A DNA stretch of 63,792 nt, filler included, from Octopus bimaculoides (lineage: Eukaryota): the NCBI RefSeq assembly GCF_001194135.2. It is 8 parts of 7 records of this genome, joined end to end, with 100 filler letters (N's around TTAATTAATTAA, not from the genome) between each part and the next. Parts side by side here need not be neighbours in the genome. Positions count along the whole stretch, not along the records: positions 23,398 to 45,698 come from NC_068992.1; 7 more parts are not named here. One strand, 5' to 3'. The position numbers and the translations under genes were made by a program. A model generated the notes under the pieces. It was not told where the DNA came from. It ran no database searches and worked only from the letters and a program-made list of their open reading frames with translations. Below are positions 16,003 to 36,889 of the stretch, piece after piece (the stretch's first letter is position 1; each line of letters starts with the position of its first letter).

Positions 16003-16395
16003 GAGTGAGAGAGCAGTGCATGCCATCAAAGTGACACTGGGGTAAAATATACGAAGCCCATTATACCCATCATGATAACCCGTATGATAAGGGTACACCA
16101 GGTCGAGTAGCCCATCCTGTTCAAAAGGTCCATGAATAAGGTTTGTTTAAGGATGTTGAGCAAAACACCCATGTTTCCAAAGGTGAATTATTCAAACCCC
16201 AAAGAATTCCTCTCACTCCTTGGCCAGGATGCTCCCCCTCTACTTCTGCTCATGATCAGAGATGCACATATCGTCAGCCACCAAGGGACATGCTCAACTG
16301 GTTAAGGTCAAACAACGGACAAGCAAATCTGTGGTATTAAGCAGAATATTTGCTGTAGCCCATCTTTTATACCAAGACAAAACAATGTACATGAT
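16003..16395. mobile_element. Interspersed repeat of unassigned family
   Basis: Higher-GC block bounded by (ATT)n tracts; recognised as a common octopus repeat from memory only, with a single copy in this window. Confidence 0.35.
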
Positions 16396-23397: not shown

Positions 23398-25890
23398 CGA
23401 ATGCGAGATGTTGAATGGTTCCGATAGATGGCCATTCACCTGTATGACCGAGCAGATGCCGCTGTATAAAGCAGCTATCCACCCGTGGAAGACCTGACCA
23501 AAGCCAGCTGCCAGGTATCGATGGTCGACCCTATCGAAGGCTTTAGACTGATCTAAATTTATCAAAGCCCCACCCGCGCCAGCTTCGTTACCCACCCTCT
23601 CTATGATGTAAGGCATGAAATGGAGGTTGTCGTGGATAGACCTGGTCGGCACGGCGCATGTCAGCGCCTTGCTGATCAGTTTGCCCACGACAAGCGCCAA
23701 TCTTCAACTCTGCATTGAGCAGAGTGATGGGCCTAAAGTTCCCTATAATGTCCCCGTTGTTTGGGTCCTTTCTTAGCAAAGCCACCACTCCTCAACAAAC
23801 AAAAGCAGGAATTTTCTCGTTTTGTTGCCAGTTGCACTAGACGTTTGCCAAGACACCCACAAACAAGTCTGGCATTGACATATAAAGCTCGTAAGGCAGA
23901 CCATCCAAACCCGGCGATCTACCTCTCGTGCAGCCTTTCATCGCTTCCTGTACTTCCCAGGCAGATATGGGTCCTTCGCAGCACTCGGCTTCGCTGGTCG
24001 AGAGTTGCGGCAGGCTGTCTAGGTACACACCGAAGTCTGTTCCGTCGTCCATCCTACTGTTCATCCCGAACAATTGAGCAAAGTGCTGCTGAAAGGCCGC
24101 GCACATCTGCTTCGGTTCCGAAATCTCGCAGTTGTTCTGGTCCACCAAAGACCGAATGGTTGCTCTGTTGCCACGCTTCGCCTTAGTCCCCTCCCCGCTT
24201 ACTGAAAGTGCTTTAGCTCTGACAACGCAGCCTTCATGCTTGGCATCAAAGTGTTGGTCGAGGGCCAACTTCGCTGCTAACACGTCGGTTGCGATGCCTG
24301 TCCTAAGAGCCTCGTCTAGTTTATTAACTAAATCCCGCTCTGTTTTCTTACGTTCTACAGCTAGAGCCTTACTAAACCTAATTGATTCTGCTCTAATTGC
24401 CTGCTTCAGGGCGAACCACCAGTTGTTATTGATAATTGCCCTGGTTAAAGCCCTCTTAACTAATAAACTAATCCGGTCTCTGTAGGCTTTGCACGCCATT
24501 AACAACGCGTTTAGCTTCCAGTAACCGGGACCTTGTCTATGGAGCCTATCTAAGTCGACCGTACAGATCACGAATTTGTGGTCCGTGTAGCCGACTATGT
24601 TGAATTGTGGACACCCTATGCTATCCTTATCCACTGGCCTACAGAAAATTCTATCTAAGTACGATCTAGACGACCCGATGCGATTAGTCCAAGTCCACAT
24701 TGGCACATTCGGGTTGTCTAGTCGATACTTGTCGGACAGCTGAAAGCATCTGAGCAGGTTGGCAAGGCTCTTGCATCCCCCTTTCCTATCAGATGCTCCC
24801 GCACCCACCCTATCGATACGTTCGCCTAAGACAGCCTTCCAATCCCCAACTAGCACTAAAGTGCGAGAAGTACCCAGGAAAACCTCCAGACGTTTGAAAT
24901 AATCCGACTGCCCTGCTCCTGTCGGAGCTTAGGCAGCCAGTAGTCTAAAGGCAGCGCCGTCACTACTATCGACGTCCAGGACCACCAACTTACCTTCTGG
25001 ATCCAGGAAGACTGCCCTTATTTTCAAGTCCAGGCCTTTCCGAAATAGCACCGCAGTACCCCCACCGCCCGCTTCCGGCCGACACGGAGATAGGAAAATC
25101 TCGTATCCGCCAAAAAGGGCTGCGAGTTCCTGTGGGTTGGAGAGCCTCATTTCGCTTATGGCTGCTACATCTACACTGTAAGACCTCAGGTCGTTCAACA
25201 GGTGACCTTGTTTCCAAGGCGACCCGAGGCCTCTCACATTTATGCTTCCGATTCTGAGAATTACCATGTTTTTTTCAAAAAAGGAAAAAATTAGAGGAGA
25301 AAAGGCTCTACTTACTGTTTTCTGGTGGGGTGGCTCCCCTATGTTTCCGTGTGGGTGTTTCCACTAAATTCCGATAAAGTCTTTGGGAGAAACCTCTCCC
25401 TAGCGACCCAACATCATTCGGAAACTTTTCTTTTATTTTATTGTAGTTTTCTTCAGTGATCTTTAGTGTGAGTATGTGTGCTGGTGGTGCGTTGTGTAGG
25501 GGTATAATGAAGTTTGTGATATTTGCATTTGTACAGTTTTTAAAAAAGTTTAATAAGTGTTCATTTTTGGTGTTGATGGCTGTTACGTTTGTGGTGTGTG
25601 TGATTGTTGGTGTTTGCGGTGGAGAAGGTGTTGCTATTTGTTGTGAGTGTGTTTTGTTGTTGTTGCTGATGATGTTGGGAAGCTCACCTTTTTCGCGCCT
25701 CCCCTCTTTGTCAATTGTTTCTTTTGTCTTTCTTCTCTGTTTTTTCGTTGGTGGTACAGTGTGCCACTTCCCTTTCTCACTATCAGTGCTCGCACAATCC
25801 GAGCTGATCTGATCTGGAAAGGGAATGTTTGTAGGATCTGGCGAAAATTCTTTTGCAATTTCTGTTGTTGTTGGTTCTGTTATTTTCTTA
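23398..25890 (-). mobile_element. Tx1/L1-clade LINE: ORF1 C-terminal part and disrupted ORF2 (APE endonuclease + RT)
   Basis: ORF2 starts at 25267 (IGSINVRGL, APE motif I), then GDWKAVL, SYLDRIF, TDHKFV, SPGLDGLP, NFRPITLLN, LDQSKAFDRVDH. Premature stop at 24929 and frameshifts. The upstream low-complexity basic ORF ends at 25308. Confidence 0.9.
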
Positions 25891-25971
25891 ATAATAATAA
25901 TAATAATAATAACTTCAACTTTACGATGAAAGTAAACAAACAAAGTTTGTCTTTAGAAGCATTGAGATGTA

Positions 25972-26123
25972 TTGTAAGATACAGAAATAAATTTATTTCT
26001 CAAACGCGTGATAATGCTATGAATAGCTTGATCAGGATAAATTATCCATATAATGCAGAAAAATACGTTACCAGCCAGCATTATCACGCGCTTGAGAAAT
26101 AAATTTATTTCTGTATCTTACAA
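25972..26123. mobile_element. 152-bp fold-back MITE with ~47-bp TIRs and putative TA target duplication
   Basis: TTGTAAGATACAGAAATAAATTTATTTCTCAAACGCGTGATAATGCT versus AGCATTATCACGCGCTTGAGAAATAAATTTATTTCTGTATCTTACAA; TA on both sides. Confidence 0.75.
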
Positions 26124-26181
26124 TAATAATAGCATTGAAAAATGCCTTAGGAATGAAAACCCAGGTTCGAAATTTCTCCAA

Positions 26182-26227
26182 GACATCTGATGAATGCTGG
26201 AGGGTATATCAGCCAAAACTTTGTGTT
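26182..26227 (+). ncRNA. Degenerate minimal type I hammerhead ribozyme
   Basis: GACAT-CTGATGA-ATGCTG-GAGGGTATAT-CAGC-CAAAAC-TTT-GTGTT. The CUGAUGA core and GCTG/CAGC stem II are present, but the GAAA box reads AAAA. Confidence 0.55.
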
Positions 26228-26403
26228 AACAACAAACAAGATGAGGACAAATATCCGTCAAATGTAAATAATGTAAATAATTCCTCATCTCTTAAATGTA
26301 GAACTGTATCAGAAAATATGTTTGTTCTTAATCACACACACACACACACACACACAGTTACTCACCTAAAATCATTAAAAAGCAAGAATAAAGCCATTCT
26401 TAC

Positions 26404-26547
26404 CAGATATGGCAAGAAAATTGATGTCATGTCCTACTCTTCGTGCCAAAGAGCCATTCTGTCCAAAGCCAGAAAGTCTGGTATAAATCAATCTTGGATT
26501 AACAGACAATAAACTTTCAGGTCCCAAACCATGTTTTTCCATGACCC
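26404..26547 (-). pseudogene. AMACR: Isolated internal exon of alpha-methylacyl-CoA racemase (CoA-transferase family III); exon or pseudo-exon
   Basis: 144-nt open exon with TAG acceptor and GTAAG donor, encoding [49 protein letters not shown]. It matches the AMACR segment around the GHDINY motif; no other AMACR exon was found in the window. Confidence 0.8.
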
Positions 26548-27927
26548 CTAGAAAATGAAATAGCAATATGAATAAGGAACAAGAACGAAGGACAATGCTA
26601 AATACACATACAAGATGAGGACAAATATCCGTCAAATGTAAATAATGTAAATAATTCCTCATCTCTTAAATATAGAACTATAATTCCATTCTATAGTAAA
26701 AGAGATATCCCAGAACTGACAGCAATTTAGTTTTGGTTTTTGTACATACACTAAAAATATGAGCTGTGTGCATGTAAGAGGAATGGCGTCTGGCCATAGA
26801 AAATCTGCATCAATAAACTCCGTCTGACCCATGCAAGCATGAAAAAGTGGACATTAAAACAATGATGTATATGTGCGTGTGCATGTATGTTTGTGTGAGT
26901 GAGATTCTTATTTGCCAAGTGTTTGCTGGTATGTAAACAATGGCTCCCTTTAAATGAGGCTCAGGTTTTGGTTAGAGTTACATTAGTGTTTCGAGTTTAG
27001 GATTAAGGTTTATTTTAGGGTTTAAGGGATTGGGGTGGTCAGAGATGAAAATCTGTTGCTGTACTGAAATTTCTTTGCACATGCATACAGCTCATATTTT
27101 TAGTCAATCTGTTCTAACTACATCAAATATGCTAGCACCCATTTTACTATAAAGGTTTTTATGCAGTAGGCATCCCTGGGTGGTATTTACATTTGATCAT
27201 TCTTTCAAGTTTTTAAGACCCCTTACAAAAAGAAATAAATAAACCTTCAGTCCTTTGATTGTTATTAGATTTTGCAAAGGAAGACAAATAAGACTGAAAC
27301 ATGTCTAAAGTTGTCCCTGTGCTGCTAAACATTCAGACTCACCATGCAGTTCATAATCAATTGTTAAGATTCCAGGGTTACCTCCTCTATATTCCTTGAT
27401 CAGAATTATTCATTCCATGATTTGATTTCATTACTATAGTAATTAATCTAATTAAAATTAAATCAAGTATGATGTACCCACTTTACTTTTATGGGTAGGA
27501 TTTCCACAAACAAACACCTGAATACTCTGGGGGAATATTGTTAACACAGTATAGTAATAACTGTGATGGTACTGTACTACAATGTGACTGAAGGTTGTTT
27601 TAACCATTCCACTTCACTTTCATCAGAATATCCTAATCTTGATATGCACTCCCATCATTGTCTTCTTCGTCACAACCATCATCGCCTCCACCACCATCAT
27701 TGCTGCCATGCATCTCCAACCCCACCACCACTACCATCATCATTTTTACATATGTTTTTCCATGATTGCAATAGGTGAGACAGGTCATCTCCATCTGCAG
27801 TTCTTTTGTCAACATGATGATAATGGTGATGATAGTGATGAAATAAAAGGGCTAGAAACTAATCAATAGATATTGATCTATTGGTATTTTGTATTTTTTA
27901 TTGTATTTTTCCCCCTTTTCTTTTTAG

Positions 27928-28062
27928 TACCATTGAAGCAATGAATGGTAATATTAGCTTCCAAGATGCATTAAGAACCAGGTTAAATATTATTAAACCA
28001 AGTAAAAATATTCTTAAACAGTTTCTAGAAACTCATCCACCAAAATTAACCGATGGAGTCAA
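27928..28062 (+). CDS. PSPH: Phosphoserine phosphatase, internal exon (first exon seen)
   Basis: TTTTTAG acceptor, TIEAMNGNISFQDALRTRLNIIKPSK...PPKLTDGVK, GTAAGT donor; 135 nt, phases match the next exon. Confidence 0.9.
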
Positions 28063-28129
28063 GTAAGTTATTTTGTTTGTTTGATTTGCTTTTTTCTTTT
28101 TTTTTGCATTAATTTGTCTTTAATTATCA

Positions 28130-28480
28130 TTATCATCTGGTTGAGCTCCCTCAAACATTTTCAACTTGCACATCTCATCTGTGTCAGTCCTACATTAGTT
28201 GAGCAAGGTCTTCGGGAAGGCATCCAGTGTTTCTGGGGAGTTGATCTACGTACGTTGTGTTTGGATGACCTGCTCGAGTACGGCCATGCTTTGACATCCA
28301 TAGCCATAGGTCACTTTACAGGACATTGCTGACAAGCTCTTGTTTAGCTCATCAACAATGTCCTGTGAAGTGCAAGCACCTTTCCCTTTTAATGGTGGAA
28401 ATGGGCAGGATATATCCATTCAGTGGGTTCTTGGTAGGATGAGTTCTCTAAGATACATCTAAGACTGTTCTTAACATTCA
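28130..28480 (-). mobile_element. Degenerate RTE-like LINE C-terminal remnant
   Basis: Minus strand TYGYGCQSMAV...LDAFPK resembles the RTE YGxETW...LDAF region; many stops. Confidence 0.35.
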
Positions 28481-28497
28481 GGTGTCAATTCTGTGTA

Positions 28498-28720
28498 ACT
28501 GGCAACGGCCACGCTCAAAATGGTGCACCCCATGTGCCACCCGCACAAGAGCCAGTCTAGGAGCACTGGCAACGATCTCGCTCGAAAATCCCACGAAGGC
28601 CAGCTAGGCGGCACTGGCAACAGCCACGCTCAAAATGGTGTATTTCATGTGTCACCCGCACAAGAGCCAGTCCAGGGGCACTGGCAACGATCTCGCTCGA
28701 AAATCCTACGACGGCCCATC
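28498..28720. repeat. Two tandem ~112-bp units (ACTGGCAACGGCCACGCTCAAAATGGTG...)
   Basis: The same unit type occurs inside the RTE-tail element at 33960-34200. Confidence 0.7.
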
Positions 28721-29230
28721 TATAAAATGTTTAATTAATTATTAAATGATATTTAACAATCTTTTTCTAATTCTAATTTTGTTATGAATATTTTTTTAAA
28801 TTCTTTCGTGGTTTATATTTCTAAATAATAATAACAACAGTCGATTGGCAGAATCGGTAGAGCGTTGCAAAAAAATGTGCATTTCTTCTAGCTCTTTACA
28901 TTCTGGGTTCAAATTCTGCCTAGATCAACTCTGCCTTCCATCCTTTCGGGGTCGATGTTATCAACTTAACATCTCACCCAAAATTTCAGGCTCTATGCCT
29001 GTACTAGTAAGGATTGTTATCATCATCATCATCATCATCATTACTATTGACAGTGCCAGTGGCACATAAAAAGCACCCACTACACTCTCGGAGTGTTTCC
29101 AGCTGTGGAAACATTGTCTGATCAGACTGGAGCCTGGTGCAGCCATTGGCTCTCCAGACTTCAGTCAAACCGTCCAACCCATGCCAGAATGGAAAACAGA
29201 CATTAAATGATGGTGATGATGATGACATGA

Positions 29231-29440
29231 GGCAGCGAGCTGGCAGAATCATTAGCATGCTGGACAAAATGCTTAGCGATATTTTGTCTGTCGCTACATT
29301 CTAAGTTCACATTCTGCTGAGGTCGACTTAGCCTTTCATCCTTTCGGGGTCGATAAAATAAGTCCCAGTTGAACACTGGGGGTCAATGTGATCAATCCAT
29401 CCCTACCTCCCCCAAGCTGCCCTTGTGGCAAAAATTTGAA
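29231..29440 (+). mobile_element. SINE family A
   Basis: GGCAGCGAGCTGGCAGAATCATTAGC head and CCTTTCATCCTTTCGGGGTCGATAAAATAAG body. Confidence 0.8.
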
Positions 29441-30231
29441 ATCCTTATTTCTATTAGCACGACCATTAATGTGCTGTACAAAATGCTTCATGGCATTTCT
29501 TCTAGTTTTTTTACATTCTTAAGTTCAAATCCAGACAAGATCAACTTCGCTTTTTCATCTTTTTGGAAACTGATAACATAAAGACTCAGTGGAATACAGT
29601 AGACAATCAGCTACTTCCCTCGACCTAAAAGAAATTGCTGGCCTTGTGCCAAGATTTGAAATGGTTATTATTATTATTATTAGTAGTAGTAGTAGTAGTA
29701 GTAACAATTTTGTCTTTCATCCTTTCAGGGTTGATGACATAAGTACTATCATCATCAATTAATTTCCATTTTCCATGCTAGCATGGGTTGGATGATTTGA
29801 CAGGAGCTGGCACGCTGGAGAGCTGCACCAGGCTACAATTGTCTATGTTGGCATGGTTTCTATAGCTGAATACCCTTCCTAACACTAACCACTTTACAGA
29901 GTGCATTGGGTGCTCTTTACATGGCACAAGCCTCCATGTGAAGCCTGATGTATGTATCAGCAATATGATCCTGAAGCTCTTCCTCCATTGTCCAAATTTC
30001 AATTTCACAGACGAATGCTCTCCACACACACCATCTGTGCAATTAATCAATACACATTTCTAATTCTAGTAAATTAAACAAATTTGGTAATTAAAAAATG
30101 AAAACATTTTTTTCAACCAGTTTGCCATTAGACATAAAATTATTTTCTTCCAAACCATTACAATTTTGTTTAGTAAAGAAATAACATAATATAGCATTTT
30201 ACTGTATGTTTTACCCCTTTTGGTTTCACAG

Positions 30232-30377
30232 AGACCTGATACTTATACTACAGGAAAAAAACATTGATGTCTATCTTATTTCGGGAGGATTCCGTACCAT
30301 CATTGAGACTGTTGCCAAAGAAGTGAACATTCCAAAAGATCATATATTTGCAAACAGGTTGCAGTTTGATCAAGATG
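30232..30377 (+). CDS. PSPH: Phosphoserine phosphatase exon
   Basis: CAG acceptor, DLILILQEKNIDVYLISGGFRTIIETVAKEVNIPKDHIFANRLQFDQDG (HAD motif II, SGGF), GTGAGT donor; 146 nt. Confidence 0.95.
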
Positions 30378-30496
30378 GTGAGTATATTATCCATTCAACA
30401 TTGGTTTTTTTAATGGGAACTATATCTGTGGTAGGATGCTCTTCTTGTCACCAACTCTTATCTGTTTATCATGTAAGGGATTTTTTTTTATTCTAC

Positions 30497-30707
30497 ATGT
30501 AGTTAGGGTTTCAAACCACCATCTGAAGACTGCTAACCATCTGCAATCTTGTTATTAAATCATAAGCTGGCACTTCAATATAACAATCACCTGCAGCTTT
30601 TTTTACAACTCCATATTATTGGAACCATTTTTAAATAGATTAATTAATTCTGCAAAAGACATCACAAACCATTTTGCTTCTTCTTTCACTTTCTTCCTCA
30701 AAACATT
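30497..30707 (-). repeat. Inverted copy of PSPH terminal exon and 3'UTR (32852-33059)
   Basis: Reverse complement aligns almost base-for-base with 32852-33059, with about a dozen substitutions and one small indel by eye. Confidence 0.95.
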
Positions 30708-30822
30708 TTTTCACAGTGTACAGTTACAGGTCATAACATCTACAAGGAATGCAAACATCATAATACTGTTTTGCTCAGCTGGTAACAAGTGAAGCAATGA
30801 AATGTCACATTCACACACATAT

Positions 30823-30854
<32 letters not shown>

Positions 30855-31147
30855 TCATGTATACATATTTTGAAGCACACATCTGTGTATGCCAGGTCAG
30901 CTAACCAACACCAACTTCAGCACAATGGTATTCCATTAAGCACTTCTCAGTGCATGTGTAAGTGGCATCTCTACACACTATACATCCAGACACTCAAGGC
31001 AACGGACTGTTTCATATTCAAACTTGTAACCATCCAGCCATAGAAACTATGCCAAAGGAGAGAGCAGAATATAACACAGTCTTCTGTCGGATCCCGTCAA
31101 ACTGTCCAACTGATGCCAGCATGGAAAACCGATGATAATGTCAGGCT

Positions 31148-31275
31148 TCTTTCCATATACCAAATCTACTCACAAGGCTTTGGTTGGCCCAGGACGATCA
31201 TAGAAGACACTTGCCCAAAGTACCACACAATAAGACTGAACTCAAGCCATTTTTAACCACACTGCTATGCCTGCA
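31148..31275 (-). mobile_element. CORE-like SINE, family D
   Basis: ACCAAATCTACTCACAAGGCTTTGGTTGGCCC...AGAAGACACTTGCCCAA. Confidence 0.65.
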
Positions 31276-31414
31276 TCTGAACCACTTTGTTAATTTACAT
31301 GAATTATTATGATAATTACTCTAACGTTTCTTTAAACCACTTGACATTATATTATTTATCACATCATCATCATCATTTAACAGCAGTTTTAATTCACCAT
31401 TTTTATATTTTCAG

Positions 31415-31563
31415 GTAATTATGTTAGTTTTGATAAAGCAGAGCTCACTGCCAAGAGTGGTGGTAAAGGACAAGTAATTCAACTTTTGAAAGATAAGCAT
31501 AATTATAGCAATTTAATTATGATCGGTGATGGTGCAACTGACATGGAAGCTTGTCCTCCTGCT
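31415..31563 (+). CDS. PSPH: Phosphoserine phosphatase exon
   Basis: TTTTCAG acceptor, GNYVSFDKAELTAKSGGKGQVIQLLKDKHNYSNLIMIGDGATDMEACPPA (HAD motifs III and IV, GDGATD), GTAAGT donor; 149 nt. Confidence 0.95.
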
Positions 31564-31638
31564 GTAAGTAATCTAATATTTCTATGCACATTGAAATAAC
31601 AGCTTGGATTGCAATCAAATGTGCAACATAACTATTTT

Positions 31639-31681
31639 GTGTGCTGATGAAAGGAAATAACCCGGAAATCGCGATACACAT
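31639..31681 (+). ncRNA. Candidate minimal type I hammerhead ribozyme in a PSPH intron
   Basis: GTGTG-CTGATGA-AAGGAAATAACCCG-GAAA-TCGCGA-TA-CACAT; intact core boxes, palindromic helix III, weak stem II. Confidence 0.45.
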
Positions 31682-32827
31682 TGTTTTGAGCTGAGTGAGG
31701 ATGCTAGATTCCCTTGTTCGAAAATTTAAGGACACAGATCATGTGGTATAGCCAGCTGGAGACGATGTCTCCTGGGGCTAAATTATAGCAACATTCATCC
31801 TAAACCAGGACTGCCATGTTATGTTGGCAAACAATCTTTACTCCAAAGTACTGTTGCTGAATATCTCGTGTTGTGAGATTTAAAAATAGTAATTTTCTAA
31901 AAACTATTTACAATTAACTGTAGTCGAGGTTTATCACACATTTTCACATGTATTTTTGTGTTAGCTGAGTTGAACTAGCTACTATGATCACTGTACAAAA
32001 ACACTGATTCTGCTACTGGGTCCAGTCTTCATTGTGATATGGTGGCTTGTATGCCCCAATGGCCCTGACAGCTATGCTAGCAGAAGACATGTTCCTGCTA
32101 GAGCCTGTCATGTTGAACAGGTCAAAGGTTAGATGCCAGAATGATGTGGATCACCTCTTCCCAGAAGTAAAAATAGGTTCCCATAGGGCCAATACTTCTA
32201 CCTAGAAAAAAAGCAAAGTTACAGAGGCATTGATAACTGAAAAACCAAAATAAAACTGGGAGAGGAAGGCCTTTCCTCAGGGATAAATATGAGGTGGTGC
32301 AGCAAAATCTGAAAGAAAACTGCAGGAAAAAAAAAGCAATAAGTCAACTGGAGAGAAGCAGAAAAGGCAGTCTGTAATTGAAAACAGTGGAGACAAATCA
32401 TTAATGATCCATGGTCTATAGAGAGCGAAAGACTTAAGTAATATACATAGTTTGAATTTTGATAATATATTATCAGGGTTACTTCCCCTACGTTTTTTTA
32501 TCAGAATTATTCATTCCATGATTTGTTTTCATTACTAAAGTAATCAATCTAATTAAAATTTTTCAACTTATGATATCAAGTACCCACTTCACTTTCATGG
32601 GTGGTTTTTCCACAAGCAAACACCTGAATACTCTGGGGAAGTATTGTTATTAACACAGTACAGTAATAACTGTGATGGTACTGTACTACAAAGTGACTGA
32701 GAGTTATTTTAACCATTTAAATCAATGAAGTAGTGTTGTGGCTGAATGCTCTTCCTACAACCAGCCATTATTTATAAAGTCAAATAGTGGTTAATATTTT
32801 TCTTTTCTTTTCTTTTTTCTCTCCTAG

Positions 32828-32929
32828 GATGCTTTTATTGGTTTTGGAGGTAATGTTGTGAGGAAGAAAGTGAAGGAAGAAGCAAAATGGTTTGTGATGT
32901 CTTTTACAGAATTAATTAATCTATTTTAA
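32828..32929 (+). CDS. PSPH: Phosphoserine phosphatase terminal exon
   Basis: CCTAG acceptor, DAFIGFGGNVVRKKVKEEAKWFVMSFTELINLF*; 102 nt. Confidence 0.95.
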   Translation, partial: DAFIGFGGNVVRKKVKEEAKWFVMSFTELINLF

Positions 32930-33824
32930 AATGGTTCCAATAATGTGGAGTTGTAAAAAAAGCTGCAAGTGACTGACATATTGAAGTGCCAGCCTATGAT
33001 TTAATAACAAGATTGTAAATCCTCAGTCTTCAGATGGTGGTTTGAAACCCTAACTACATATTTACATGAGACTATCTGAGAGCTTTTTTAACAAAGTCCA
33101 ATAAGTAAGAATCTATTCTCACCAGAAACCCTTGGAATGAGATAAAACCCTGCCACATATCATTAAAAATAAGATTCAACACACAATGTTTGATGTTGTT
33201 TTTGCTTGTTTTGTTTTTTAAACTAGAAGCAGAATCTCAGAAAAAGTGATTGAAAGGTATTAATCCATTTACCAATGATATCAGTAGCATAAATAGCTAC
33301 AAAAGTCAGTATATTTAGTGGTCAGTTAGCTCCAGTAAAACAGACACTGCTATTGGCCTTCCCTCCATTTTAATATCTAACATCTGCATCATTATCATCT
33401 TGATGTGCTAAGACCAAATGTGTTACACTGTCACAGGATTAGTTGAAAGGAGAGTAAGAGAAAAAGAGGAAGAGAGAAGTGTTAATGATGTTAGGTAAGG
33501 GAAAGTAATAGTTATTAAAAAGTGAGTTAAAAGGTGAGTTAGTTAAAAGAGAGCTACAAATACAATGTTTAACAGAGGAGTGATGTTCTGGTAGTGAGGT
33601 TAAAAATATGCAGATAGAGAGGGGAGGCAGTTATATTAAGAGGGAGAAGCAAATAATGTGAGAGATGCCATGTCAGCTGATGCATTATGCTGTAACATGT
33701 TTAGTGAAAGTGAGAGGTGAATTAAATGGTTAAAAAGTTTGTTGAAATATGTGGTAGAGAGAAATGTAAAGTGGTTAGCAGAGGGAAATTTTAAACATCA
33801 TATATTATTGTCATCATCATCATC

Positions 33825-34240
33825 ATCGTTTAACGTCCGCTTTCCATGCTAGCATGGGTTGGACGATTTGATTGAGGACTGGCAAACCAGATAGCTGCAC
33901 CAGGCTCCAATCTGATCTGGCAGAGTTTCTACAGCTGGATGCCCTTCCTAATACCAACCACTCCTCTTTTACGTGCCACCGGCACAAGGGCCAGTCTGGT
34001 GGTACTGGCAACAGCCACACTCAAATGGTGTTTTTTACGTGCCACCTGCATAGGAGTCAGTCCAGCGACACTGGCAACGACCTCACTCAAATGTTTTGTT
34101 CACATGCCAGTCAGGCGACGCTGGTAAAGATCATGCTCAAATGGTGCTTTTTACATGCCATTGGCACGGAAGCCAGACAGCTGCTCTGGCAGTGATCCCA
34201 CTTGGATGGTGCTGTTAGCGCTCCACAGGTGCCAGTCATT
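33825..34240 (-). mobile_element. RTE 3'-tail element (5'-truncated LINE or tail-sharing SINE)
   Basis: Reverse complement of the 3' end at 39468-39647 (GGAAGGGCATCCAGCTGTAGAAAC...GGAAAGCGGACGTTAAACGATGATGAT). Further copies at about 29045, 29750, 34930, 35150, 35525, 35880, 42300, 42640 and 43275. Confidence 0.8.
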
Positions 34241-35297
34241 GAATTTAGTTCAATTTCAATTGTGACTATCAAAATAACATTTTAATACTCAATTTTTTAC
34301 ATCTGTCAATCTATTTATCGATCTATCCACATTGACAAATACATCGATGGGTGGACAGTGGAAAGAAAGCTTATATTAGGTATAATGATAAACTTATCAT
34401 AAATAGGACTATAGATTTTCCAATGAAAGTGTAATATGTTAGTGAAATAGCTACGGATGTTATTTGTAAAACAGTACACCGCCACCACCACCCAATTGAC
34501 ACTTTTAAACAGTCTTAATTATGGAACAATAATGAAGAAGAGACAATGTATTTAACAATGAAAAGGTTTTAGAAAGTTCTGTGAATTTATGCATCAAAAA
34601 TAGAAACATGGTGTTTCCATGGATCTCACATGTATGAAAACATTTTCACTACATTCAAAACAAACTCCTAGGAAATCTTTTATCTTTTACTTGTTTCAGT
34701 CATTAGACTGCAGACATGCTGGGGCAGCACTGCCTTGAAGAATGGATTAACTCCAGTATTTATTTTTGGCTTTTTAAGCTTGGTTCTTATTCAGTTGATC
34801 TGTTTTACCAAACCACTAAGTTACAGGGACATAAACACACCAACATTGGTTTTCAAGTGGAGGTGGAGACACATAGACACACACACTTACACATATATGC
34901 AGACATTAAACAATGATGATGATATTGAATGTAAAAAGCACCCATTACATTCGTGGAGTGGAAGGGTATCCAGCTGTAGAAACATTGCCAGATCAGATTG
35001 GAGCCTGGTGCAGCCACTGGCTTTCTAAATCTCAGTCAAACCGTCCATTTATAAGGTCAGAGTACAAATCCTACTTCAACATCTTTAAGTTGTCTTTTAT
35101 GACATGCAGAGGTAACATTGGTTCTATTATTTGGCCTGCTGGTCCACTCACAGTTTAACTTCCGCTTTCCATGCTGGCATGGGTTAGACAGTTTAATCAG
35201 GGAGGCAGCACCAGGCTCCAAACTGATTTGGCAAGGTTTCCTACAGCTGGAAGCCCTTCCTAATGGCAACCACTGCGAAAATGTACTGAGTGCTTTT

Positions 35298-35360
35298 TAC
35301 ATGCCACCGGCACGGGAGCCAGTCAGGCGGCACTGAGTGCTCCCGTGCCGGTGGCATGTA
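35298..35360. repeat. Perfect 22-bp inverted repeat hairpin at the truncated end of an RTE-tail copy
   Basis: TACATGCCACCGGCACGGGAGC (35298-35319) pairs with GCTCCCGTGCCGGTGGCATGTA (35339-35360). Confidence 0.9.
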
Positions 35361-36889
35361 TAAATAAACTAAAATTATTTAAATACACAGGGCAGTCATT
35401 AACGACTTTGTCTATACAATTTCATTATGGGCAGAAAAAGTGTAGTTTATCAAAGCATCAAAACTGTCTGGTTAAAATTAAAACTATTTAATTTTAATCA
35501 GACAATTATCACCATTATTATTGTTTTAACATTTATGTTTCCATGCTTGCATAGGCCAAACAGAATTCATTGAAGTAGAGTTCTTATAGCTGGATGCCCT
35601 TCTTGTTGCCAATGCTCACTTGTTGCCTCACAAAGTGACGTTTTCCCATGGCCAGACACAATTTCATGGAGGGTTGGAAATGAACACCAATCATGTGGTA
35701 AGGCTTATTTACAATGATCACATAATGTCAAGACAAGGAGACACAAATACACACTTGTGTGCATTGTCTCCTTGTCTCAATAACACGCACTAAATGTAAA
35801 TAAACATCACCATTCTATAAGCAATATTGTTTATTTATAATCATGAAAGCATGTCTAGCTGTTTGAAATCATCATCATCATTGTTGAACGTCCACTTTCC
35901 ATGCTGGCATGAGTTGGACGGTTTCACTGAAAATTGGTGAGCCAGAGTGGGGGGACTGCACCAGCTTCCAATCTGATTTGGCAAGGTTTCTACAGCTGGA
36001 TGCCCTTCCTAACACCAACCACTCTGAGAGTGTAGTGGGTGTTTTTTACGTGCCACCAGCATGGATGCCGTTGACCTGACATTGTCATCAGCCATGACTA
36101 CAGTCTCGCTTGGCTTGACAGGTCAATACAAGCATGGTATATAGCCTAGAGTCTTGGTCACCTGTCACTGCCTCCATGATGCCCAACACTCAAGTGGTGT
36201 TTTTTGTTTGCCAATGGCATGGGTGCCAGTCAGACAGCACTGGCATCAGCCACAACTACAATTTCACTTGGTTTGACAGGTCTTCACAAAGACTAAGGAA
36301 AATATTATCTTGTTTGGGAGCAGGTGAAGATAGGTGACAGGAAGAGCATCCAGTTAAATTCCATCTGACCTGTGCAAGCATAGAAAAGAAAATATGAAAA
36401 CAATGAGAGTGATGAAAGACTTTACAACTGTTTAATATAATTAATTTTAATTATCTTATCTGCAGTTCATCATAATATTTCAGTTAAATGAACTTTAAAA
36501 AAATAAGCAGAAAGTAAACACACAAGTTGAAATGTAAAAGATAGTTTGAAAACATAACAAATATTTTATTAATGATGTTCAAACATTCCTTCATCGAACA
36601 AACATACATGAAACAGAAATGGATAAAAATAATAATTTTTATTATAACACGAATGTTTATGCATCCAAATGCACTTTGAAGATGTAACATGTACAATTAT
36701 ATGTTACTAGTGAACTAATATTCTATATACATTTTATATATGAATTCAATATCTGGTTATTATTACTATTATTGTCATTACAAAATAACAGCTTATTAAA
36801 ACCACATAAAGAGTGAATCACGTGAATTCTAATAGCACTGAGAAACTGTATTTTAAAAATATATTTGATGTAATAATCCTTTCTGCTAT

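What the first reader, a model, noticed from the sequence alone, without database searches (positions are those of the whole stretch)
26236..26679. Orphan AMACR exon bracketed by 70-bp direct repeats next to a hammerhead
Seen: a 144-nt AMACR exon with intact splice sites lies antisense to and upstream of the PSPH exons, with no other AMACR exon visible in this 22-kb piece. It is flanked by 70-bp direct repeats (26236-26305 and 26610-26679, one mismatch), each with internal inverted ends AGATGAGGA/TCCTCATCT; the left copy continues the hammerhead-bearing repeat. Usual residues KLGLG, AGHD and INY read KHGLG, VGHD and INF, each one base away. Inference: a host exon with intronic flanks was captured between pseudo-LTR copies, as in Penelope or retrozyme-type transduction, and is decaying. 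Alternatives are a genuine AMACR gene interleaved with PSPH, or a misassembly.
Basis: partly seen in the sequence, partly recalled or inferred. Interest (0 to 1): 0.7.

Follow-up and report, generated by a model that had tools for sequence, protein, structure and literature searches.

The report
Stray AMACR exon inserted in octopus intron
A 304-base copy of one exon of the AMACR gene, with bits of its introns, has been pasted backwards into an intron of the phosphoserine phosphatase gene of Octopus bimaculoides, duplicating 70 bases of the target; it is a small copy-and-paste repair or replication event, not a ribozyme-bearing mobile element.

Summary
A 144-nt AMACR exon (26404-26547, minus strand) has an intact AG acceptor and GT donor. 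It lies between two 70-bp direct repeats that differ at one base. No other AMACR exon lies within about 15 kb on one side or 19 kb on the other.

The window is Octopus bimaculoides chromosome CM046612.1. At the orthologous site in O. sinensis the 70-bp sequence occurs once, with both flanks contiguous and no AMACR sequence. So the repeats are a duplication of native PSPH intron 1, not pseudo-LTRs. The insert is 304 bp: 62 nt of upstream intron, the exon, and 98 nt of downstream intron.

No hammerhead is present. Rfam finds none, and the CTGATGA box lacks the GAAA core. That stretch is ordinary intron also present in O. sinensis. The neighbouring retroelement is an APE-type LINE, not a Penelope-like element.

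The target is one arm of a strong native palindrome. Nine other lineage-specific insertions nearby have target overlaps of only 2-11 bp.

Best reading: a templated insertion with host-site duplication, made by template switching or staggered-break repair. Reverse transcription of unspliced AMACR RNA in trans is the main rival. The donor locus could not be retrieved, and an artefact of this short-read assembly is not excluded.

The parts
26236..26305 (.). Left copy of the 70-bp target-site duplication (native PSPH intron 1 sequence)
   Evidence: Identical to 26610-26679 except one base. Its left neighbour is collinear with O. sinensis L002 16091-16204.
26306..26403 (-). 98 nt of AMACR intron downstream of the exon, including (CA)12 at 26333-26356; left end of the 304-bp insert
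   Evidence: Absent from O. sinensis at the orthologous site. Starts with the GT donor on the minus strand. No poly(A) or other tail at its end.
26404..26547 (-). AMACR exon (144 nt, split codons of the same phase at both ends), residues equivalent to 87-135 of solved racemases, catalytic His-Asp retained
   Evidence: Same exon boundaries as exon 3 of a mollusc AMACR locus, L001.
26548..26609 (-). 62 nt of AMACR intron upstream of the exon (polypyrimidine tract and AG); right end of the insert
   Evidence: Absent from O. sinensis at this site.
26610..26679 (.). Right copy of the 70-bp target-site duplication
   Evidence: Its right neighbour (26680 onward) is collinear with O. sinensis L002 16273 onward, 91% identical over 1 kb.
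26122..26235 (.). Native PSPH intron 1 between the LINE and the duplication; holds the CTGATGA box (26188-26194) read as a hammerhead
   Evidence: 90% identical to O. sinensis L002 16091-16204. No Rfam hammerhead. No GAAA core.
26206..26281 (.). Arm B of a native palindrome; its partner arm A lies off the piece (L004 10255-10341). The duplication overlaps this arm
   Evidence: The O. sinensis version folds as single-stranded DNA at -66.6 kcal/mol, z -10.9.
23398..26121 (-). LINE (APE endonuclease plus RT), a second insertion specific to O. bimaculoides, in the loop of the palindrome at an (AAT)n run. Its 5' part has a 49-nt inverted repeat (25970-26018 / 26077-26125)
   Evidence: Pfam Exo_endo_phos and a sub-threshold RVT_1 match (17.4 bits against a cut-off of 29.6). 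Absent from O. sinensis; breakpoints at L002 16091-16101. Inverted repeat I19.
27929..32917 (+). PSPH coding exons 2-5 (27929-28063, 30230-30385, 31411-31563, 32828-32917); host gene of the insertion
   Evidence: tblastn. 96% identical to O. sinensis PSPH. Exon 1 at L004 10001-10120.

Best explanation
In the Octopus bimaculoides lineage, a 304-bp stretch of the AMACR locus was copied into intron 1 of PSPH, antisense to PSPH. The stretch holds 62 nt of intron, one 144-nt exon and 98 nt of intron. The insertion duplicated 70 bp of the target.

Shown: the insertion itself, its limits, the once-only state of the 70 bp in the sister lineage, the absence of any transposon hallmark, and the palindromic nature of the target.

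Inferred mechanism: a replication or repair synthesis end left the PSPH template at 26305, copied 304 nt from the AMACR locus or its unspliced transcript, and returned to the PSPH template 70 nt behind the point of departure. That leaves the insert framed by a host-site duplication. Equivalently, a break with 70-nt staggered ends was patched with a templated fragment and the overhangs were filled in.

The hairpin-prone palindrome probably made the site fragile. The insert is not a gene and is not expected to have a function.
For: - Empty site: O. sinensis has left flank, one 70-bp copy and right flank contiguous, with no AMACR sequence in 31 kb.
- Age: the two copies differ at 1 of 70 positions and share a 2-nt indel state against O. 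sinensis, while the flanking intron differs by about 9% between the species. If the duplication predated the split, about 6 differences would be expected; my Poisson arithmetic gives P(<=1) of about 0.01.
- The 70 bp is not a dispersed repeat. In about 95 kb of octopus DNA it recurs only as the inverted arm of the local palindrome.
- There is no poly(A) or microsatellite tail, no terminal inverted repeats, and intron sequence on both sides of the exon.
- Nine other clean lineage-specific insertions in the same 30-kb comparison have overlaps of only 2-11 bp, so the 70-bp duplication is not the local transposon signature.
- The native target folds into a stem of about 70 bp, z -10.9, and a second lineage-specific insertion (the LINE) sits in its loop.
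[quoted passage not shown] Templated patches of 73-414 bp from distant, often transcribed, regions are documented at breaks (PMC5110952).
Against: - The donor AMACR locus could not be retrieved, so copy gain and junction microhomology are untested.
- Described templated-insertion cycles in tumours involve 10-100 kb segments, not 0.3 kb.
- Break-patch insertions of class 2 typically lack target duplications.
- The assembly is short-read based with N gaps nearby (38949-39465; L004 10686-12394), and no independent reads were available.
- A word-based search found no octopus AMACR protein carrying this exon. This is unexplained and leaves the donor unproven.
Confidence: 0.5

Rival explanations
1. 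RNA-mediated insertion in trans. A retroelement endonuclease and reverse transcriptase (a LINE, or a Penelope-like element, which can copy intron-containing RNA) nicked the two strands 70 bp apart. It reverse-transcribed a fragment of unspliced AMACR pre-mRNA from the plus-strand 3'-OH at 26305, giving a long target-site duplication.
For: A target duplication is the hallmark of endonuclease-initiated retro-insertion; human class 1 templated insertions have one. Templated patches are enriched for transcribed sequence and reduced by RT inhibitors. [quoted passage not shown] A LINE of the same orientation inserted 114 bp away in the same lineage.
Against: There is no poly(A) or LINE-type 3' tail and no polyadenylation signal at the sense 3' end (...TTTTCTGATAC). 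The neighbouring LINE ends in an (ATT)n tail and landed in (AAT)n, which suggests tail-specific priming that the AMACR fragment lacks. Local transposon insertions show overlaps of 2-11 bp, not 70. The documented Penelope captures are framed by pLTRs with 8-10 bp duplications, and there are no pLTRs here.
Confidence: 0.25
2. Assembly artefact. The insert or the duplication does not exist in the animal. A small AMACR contig was threaded into the PSPH intron, and overlapping contig ends (or two haplotypes differing at one SNP) were left unmerged.
For: GCA_001194135.2 derives from a short-read assembly (my recollection) and has N gaps in this neighbourhood. The single G/A difference between the copies could be a heterozygous site. 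No octopus AMACR protein containing this exon was found by the word-based search; this would fit the exon being missing from its home locus in the assembly.
Against: Both junctions lie inside an ungapped 15.5-kb stretch (L004 12395-27945). The insert ends in unique sequence, not in a repeat where a contig would break. The 70 bp is not a dispersed repeat that could mislead a graph assembler. The G variant is linked to the insert and the A variant to the native flank, which requires reads spanning real junctions (inference). The same search also failed to find AMACR from O. sinensis, so that argument is weak.
Confidence: 0.18
3. Older insertion, later lost in the O. sinensis lineage. The unit of 70 bp, insert and 70 bp predates the species split, and O. 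sinensis deleted it by recombination between the two 70-bp copies. Gene conversion kept the O. bimaculoides copies alike.
For: Recombination between direct repeats would leave exactly the single-copy state seen in O. sinensis. Comparison with the palindrome's other arm shows that most differences in the 70 bp are changes on the O. sinensis side.
Against: The copies differ at 1 of 70 positions against about 9% divergence between the species in the flanks. The exon frame and splice sites are intact. This reading needs two extra events and still requires the same initial insertion.
Confidence: 0.05
4. Genuine AMACR gene interleaved with PSPH, with this as its real exon 3.
For: Intact frame, splice sites and catalytic residues.
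Against: O. sinensis has no exon at this site. In a mollusc AMACR locus exons 1 and 2 lie within 6 kb upstream, but none is found within 19 kb here, nor any downstream exon within 15 kb. No gene model is annotated here apart from PSPH and PIGO.
Confidence: 0.02

Closest known systems
Templated insertions with host-site duplication (templated-insertion 'cycles'; replication template switching, FoSTeS/MMBIR type)
   Same: A segment copied from elsewhere is inserted, and the host site is duplicated on either side. This is explained by switching back behind the point of departure (PMC6286353).
   Different: The described cases are somatic, in tumours, with segments of 10-100 kb. Here the event is germline and fixed in the assembly, with a 304-bp segment and a 70-bp duplication. 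The donor and the microhomologies are not seen.
Templated sequence insertions / TSIPs of the human genome (Onozawa and Aplan)
   Same: Small patches (73-414 bp in the experimental system) templated from distant, often transcribed, regions, including intronic sequence. They are heritable and the donor site is kept (PMC5110952).
   Different: Class 1 has a duplication plus poly(A) and a TTTT/A site; here there is a duplication but no tail and no such site. Class 2 has no duplication. This case fits neither class cleanly.
Penelope-like element capture of intron-containing host genes between pLTRs (Adineta vaga NRPS case)
   Same: Host sequence with introns is copied to a new site and framed by direct repeats, and an empty-site comparison is available (PMC3846280).
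   Different: In that case the repeats are element pLTRs absent from the empty site, and the duplication is 8 bp. Here the repeats are the target itself, present once at the empty site. There is no pLTR, no hammerhead and no GIY-YIG element.
LINE-mediated exon shuffling by 3' or 5' transduction
   Same: A LINE of the same orientation lies next to the exon copy.
   Different: Transduced sequence abuts the LINE inside one pair of duplications. Here 184 bp of native intron separates them, and the exon copy has its own duplication.

Membership tests
Hammerhead ribozyme | Conserved core CUGANGA ... helix II ... GAAA, with three helices around a cleavage site | tested here: not met
   CTGATGA at 26188-26194 is followed by a GCTG/CAGC stem and then CAAAAC, not GAAA. 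No core match was found near the site on either strand.
Hammerhead ribozyme | Match to an Rfam hammerhead covariance model | tested here: not met
   No hammerhead family at E<=1 over 22.3 kb or at E<=10 over 25900-26800.
Penelope-like element or retrozyme capture between pLTRs | Flanking direct repeats are element sequence, absent from the empty site | tested here: not met
   The O. sinensis empty site holds the full 70 bp once between the same flanks. Criterion from PMC3846280.
Penelope-like element or retrozyme capture between pLTRs | Repeats belong to a multi-copy family, or an RT with GIY-YIG endonuclease lies nearby | tested here: not met
   No further copies in about 95 kb of octopus DNA except the local inverted arm. 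The neighbouring element has Exo_endo_phos plus a sub-threshold RVT_1 match (17.4 bits against a cut-off of 29.6).
LINE-mediated templated insertion (TSIP class 1 / retrocopy) | Target-site duplication of at least 5 bp | tested here: met
   70 bp.
LINE-mediated templated insertion (TSIP class 1 / retrocopy) | 3' poly(A) or element-type tail and a polyadenylation signal | tested here: not met
   The sense 3' end is ...AACATATTTTCTGATAC, joined directly to the duplication.
LINE-mediated templated insertion (TSIP class 1 / retrocopy) | Endonuclease target motif at the nick | tested here: inconclusive
   The inferred nick is AGAACT^ATAATT, which is not the L1 TTTT/A site. The specificity of octopus LINEs is unknown to me.
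Templated insertion by template switching with host duplication | Insert framed by a duplication of host sequence that is single-copy at the ancestral site | tested here: met
Templated insertion by template switching with host duplication | Donor locus retained (copy gain) and microhomology at both switches | not testable with these tools
   The O. bimaculoides genome cannot be searched here. Exact-ORF look-ups and a metagenome scan found nothing.
Alpha-methylacyl-CoA racemase (CoA-transferase family III) gene | Exon homologous to the racemase core with the catalytic His-Asp | tested here: met
   Pfam E 2.6e-13. Aligns to residues 87-135 of 1x74 and 2g04, with GHD retained.
Alpha-methylacyl-CoA racemase (CoA-transferase family III) gene | Remaining exons present in order at the locus | tested here: not met
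   None from 15 kb on the low-coordinate side to 19 kb on the high-coordinate side.

The most novel reading that the evidence does not exclude
The insertion is real and RNA-templated. A retroelement reverse transcriptase in the octopus germline copied a fragment of unspliced pre-mRNA, carrying a symmetric exon (same phase at both ends) with working splice sites, into another gene's intron with a long duplication. That would be a transposon-independent or in-trans route for scattering shuffle-ready exons in cephalopod genomes, caught soon after the event.
Probability: 0.15. Interest if true: 0.55.

Novelty: new member of a known kind. Interest (0 to 1): 0.3.

Why it matters
If real, this is a clean and young example, with the empty site preserved in a sister species, of how a complete exon with both splice sites can land in a foreign intron without a transposon carrying it. 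That is the raw material that exon-shuffling models need. Here the exon lies antisense to its host gene, so it is probably inert. The finding also warns annotators that an isolated, intact-looking exon is not a gene, and that direct repeats around host sequence are not necessarily element ends. The palindromic target, with two independent lineage-specific insertions, is a small natural case of structure-prone DNA attracting rearrangements.

Tried and rejected
- Rfam scans for a hammerhead or any structured RNA at the site gave only sub-threshold snoRNA and miRNA noise. ARAGORN found no tRNA in 25800-27000.
- I looked for AMACR exons 1 and 2 using my recalled human sequence, exons from a mollusc locus (L001) and seven full-length representatives. 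None was found in the piece, L003 or L004.
- I tried to find the donor locus or independent assemblies. Exact look-ups of three ORFs spanning the junctions or the exon gave nothing on record. A metagenome scan with 45 nt of the exon gave nothing. The word-based protein search returned a single mollusc exon fragment and no octopus AMACR. The exhaustive representative search gave at best 73% identity, to fish and other animals.
- The O. vulgaris PSPH look-up for a second empty site was not on record.
- A single event with the LINE (5' transduction or one shared duplication) is rejected. 184 bp of native intron lies between them, and the LINE has its own (AAT)n junctions.
- The 70 bp as a MITE or SINE is rejected for lack of other copies. 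Its internal 9-nt inverted ends are also present in the O. sinensis native sequence.
- The weak C/D-box snoRNA resemblance of the 70 bp (E 0.2 in a 901-nt search) is treated as chance.

Full report
WHAT IS THERE

The repeats 26236-26305 and 26610-26679 are 70-nt direct repeats with one mismatch (G26282 against A26656), and the similarity ends sharply on both sides. None of 100 dinucleotide-preserving shuffles gave two matches.

Between the repeats, on the minus strand, lies a 144-nt open exon (26404-26547), preceded by ...ttttctAG and followed by GTaaga. Its product is [49 protein letters not shown]. It matches Pfam CoA_transf_3 (E 2.6e-13) and residues 87-135 of solved alpha-methylacyl-CoA racemases, with the catalytic His-Asp kept. 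The exon has split codons of the same phase at both ends. Its boundaries match those of exon 3 in an AMACR locus of an unidentified mollusc, L001, where exons 1 and 2 lie 3 and 6 kb upstream.

WHERE THE WINDOW COMES FROM

A large minus-strand exon at 43395-45371 is GPI ethanolamine phosphate transferase 3 (PIGO) of octopus. The plus-strand exons at 27929-32917 are phosphoserine phosphatase (PSPH). The piece is 100% identical to Octopus bimaculoides GCA_001194135.2, chromosome CM046612.1.

The longer locus L004 (window x = L004 x - 11003) places PSPH exon 1 at L004 10001-10120. This is left of an assembly gap (L004 10686-12394) that forms the piece's left edge. The AMACR exon therefore lies inside PSPH intron 1, antisense to PSPH, not upstream of the gene. 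The NCBI gene list for this locus holds only PSPH and PIGO. No other AMACR exon is found from 15 kb on the low-coordinate side to 19 kb on the high-coordinate side.

THE DECISIVE COMPARISON

The orthologous PSPH locus of O. sinensis (L002, CM016870.1) is collinear with the window at 90-95% identity. Window 26122-26305 and window 26606-27628 both align to L002, and they overlap there on a single copy of the 70-bp sequence (L002 about 16203-16272). The three-way alignment shows left flank, one 70-bp copy and right flank running on without interruption in O. sinensis. No AMACR sequence occurs anywhere in the 31-kb locus.

Relative to O. sinensis, O. bimaculoides therefore carries a 304-bp insert (26306-26609) plus a duplication of 70 bp of its own intron. 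The insert consists of 62 nt of intron, the exon, and 98 nt of intron with a (CA)12 run.

The repeats are thus the duplicated target. They are not ends of an element, and their internal AGATGAGGA/TCCTCATCT pair is simply part of the native intron, present in O. sinensis too.

AGE AND POLARITY

The two copies differ at 1 of 70 positions. They share a 2-nt indel state against O. sinensis, while the surrounding intron differs by about 9% between the species. Had the duplication predated the split, about six differences would be expected; my Poisson arithmetic gives P of about 0.01 for one or fewer.

An internal outgroup (the palindrome's other arm) shows that most substitutions in this stretch are on the O. 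sinensis side, so the argument is good but not overwhelming. An older insertion later removed from O. sinensis by recombination between the copies remains a minor possibility. It would not change what the structure is.

WHAT IT IS NOT

- No hammerhead. Rfam gives no hammerhead match at E<=1 over the piece or at E<=10 over 25900-26800. The CTGATGA box at 26188-26194 is followed by a short stem and CAAAAC instead of GAAA. The whole stretch 26122-26235 is single-copy native intron also present in O. sinensis.
- No Penelope-like element. The retroelement to the left (23398 to about 26121, minus strand) has an Exo_endo_phos endonuclease and a weak, sub-threshold RVT_1 match (17.4 bits against a cut-off of 29.6), so it is a LINE.
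- Not a pLTR capture. In the documented Penelope capture of an intron-containing gene, the pLTRs are absent from the empty site and only an 8-bp duplication is present once there (PMC3846280). The same test here gives the opposite result for the 70 bp.
- Not LINE transduction. 184 bp of native intron separates the LINE from the insert, and the LINE has its own junctions in an (AAT)n run.
- Not a dispersed repeat. The 70 bp has no other copy in about 95 kb of octopus DNA.

CONTEXT THAT BEARS ON MECHANISM

The first 46 nt of the 70 bp, together with the 30 nt to its left, form one arm of a native palindrome. The other arm lies about 140 bp away in O. sinensis (L002 15948-16043) and is present in both species. 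As single-stranded DNA the O. sinensis region folds at -66.6 kcal/mol against -25.8 for shuffles (z -10.9).

In O. bimaculoides the LINE sits in the loop of this palindrome and the AMACR fragment in its right arm. These are two lineage-specific insertions within about 200 bp.

In the same 30-kb comparison, nine other clean lineage-specific insertions show junction overlaps of only 2-11 bp. The 70-bp duplication is therefore unlike the local transposon signature. The insert has no poly(A), no microsatellite tail, no polyadenylation signal and no terminal inverted repeats.

MECHANISM

The structure is a templated segment framed by a duplication of host sequence. This is what is expected when a synthesis end leaves its template, copies a stretch elsewhere, and returns behind its point of departure. 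The description comes from work on templated insertions (PMC6286353). A staggered break patched with a templated fragment and filled in would give the same structure. Patches of 73-414 bp from distant, often transcribed, regions are documented at breaks in human cells and as heritable polymorphisms (PMC5110952).

I favour this DNA-repair or replication reading at about 0.5. The main rival, at about 0.25, is endonuclease-initiated reverse transcription of unspliced AMACR RNA in trans. It would explain a duplication, and Penelope-like elements are known to keep introns. It lacks any tail or pLTR and does not match the local duplication lengths.

An assembly artefact, at about 0.18, cannot be excluded without reads. 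Against it, both junctions lie within an ungapped 15.5-kb stretch, the insert ends in unique sequence, and the 70 bp is not a repeat that could misguide an assembler.

IS THE EXON DECAYING?

The three unusual residues are real. His occurs where Leu stands in 133 of 152 alignments and His in none. Val occurs where 141 of 150 have Ala. Phe occurs where 138 of 149 have Tyr. However, Phe is also found in the closest mollusc fragment and in functional fish AMACR, and the frame, splice sites and catalytic residues are intact. Without the donor copy, changes made after insertion cannot be told apart from octopus-specific residues.

WHAT COULD NOT BE DONE

The word-based search returned one mollusc exon fragment and no octopus AMACR. 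The exhaustive search of cluster representatives gave at most 73% identity. Three exact-ORF look-ups and one metagenome scan found nothing. I note the absence of an octopus AMACR hit as unexplained and draw no conclusion from it.

VERDICT

The 'orphan captured exon' idea is right, and the Penelope/retrozyme frame is wrong. The thing is a small templated insertion with a long host-site duplication at a palindromic site. It is a known kind of event, well preserved here, and of modest interest.

Noticed in passing
window 23398-26121 (continues to L004 10414; assembly gap at L004 10686-12394): A LINE with APE endonuclease and RT on the minus strand is absent from O. sinensis. It is inserted at an (AAT)n run, and its 3' end reads ...GGCCAATAAAACGAATTA(ATT)n. 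It lies in the loop of the native palindrome, 114 bp from the AMACR insertion.
   Followed up: partly
window 25970-26018 and 26077-26125: A 49-nt inverted repeat, 98% complementary with a 58-nt spacer, lies at the 5' end of the LINE insertion, between two (AAT)n runs. It could be the LINE 5' UTR or a separate small foldback element.
   Followed up: no
window 26206-26281 with L004 10255-10341; O. sinensis L002 15948-16043 and 16175-16250: A native palindrome with arms of about 75 nt and a loop of about 140 nt lies in PSPH intron 1 of both species. The short direct repeat TATAATTCCATT stands on both outer sides, so it may be an old foldback or MITE-like insertion. Its loop holds two tRNA-B-box-like motifs (GGTTCGAAAT, GAGTTCAATTCC).
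   Followed up: partly
window 30497-30710 (minus) and 32852-33059: An inverted partial copy of the last PSPH exon (last 24 or so codons plus 3' UTR; arms 169 nt, 93% complementary) sits in an upstream PSPH intron, and O. sinensis shares it. The intronic copy keeps ...LINLFKNGSNNMEL*, whereas the real O. bimaculoides exon has a stop after ...ELINLF. The two arms bracket the exon at 31411-31563.
   Followed up: partly
window 29737-29894, 33808-34091, 35141-35326, 35863-36075, 39477-39655, 42281-42488, 43275-43430 and others: Many copies, in both orientations, of an abundant SINE-like family with the core ...TCCATGCTAGCATGGGTTGGAC... and ...TTTCTACAGCTGGATGCCCTTCCTAA....
   Followed up: no
window 39873-40240: A long (TG)n/(TA)n microsatellite block produces spurious mir-297 and other miRNA matches in Rfam, all far below gathering scores.
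   Followed up: no
window 38949-39465: A 517-N assembly gap lies inside the PIGO gene region, flanked by ORF fragments resembling retroelement protein sequence (for example ...RLRWYGHVVRMDEDSCVKKCH).
   Followed up: no
(database result, not a window position): The word-based protein search with the 49-aa exon returned only one mollusc exon fragment and no AMACR from any annotated octopus proteome. PSPH and PIGO from the same genomes were found readily. Either the index misses short queries, or octopus AMACR is unannotated or differs in this exon.
   Followed up: partly
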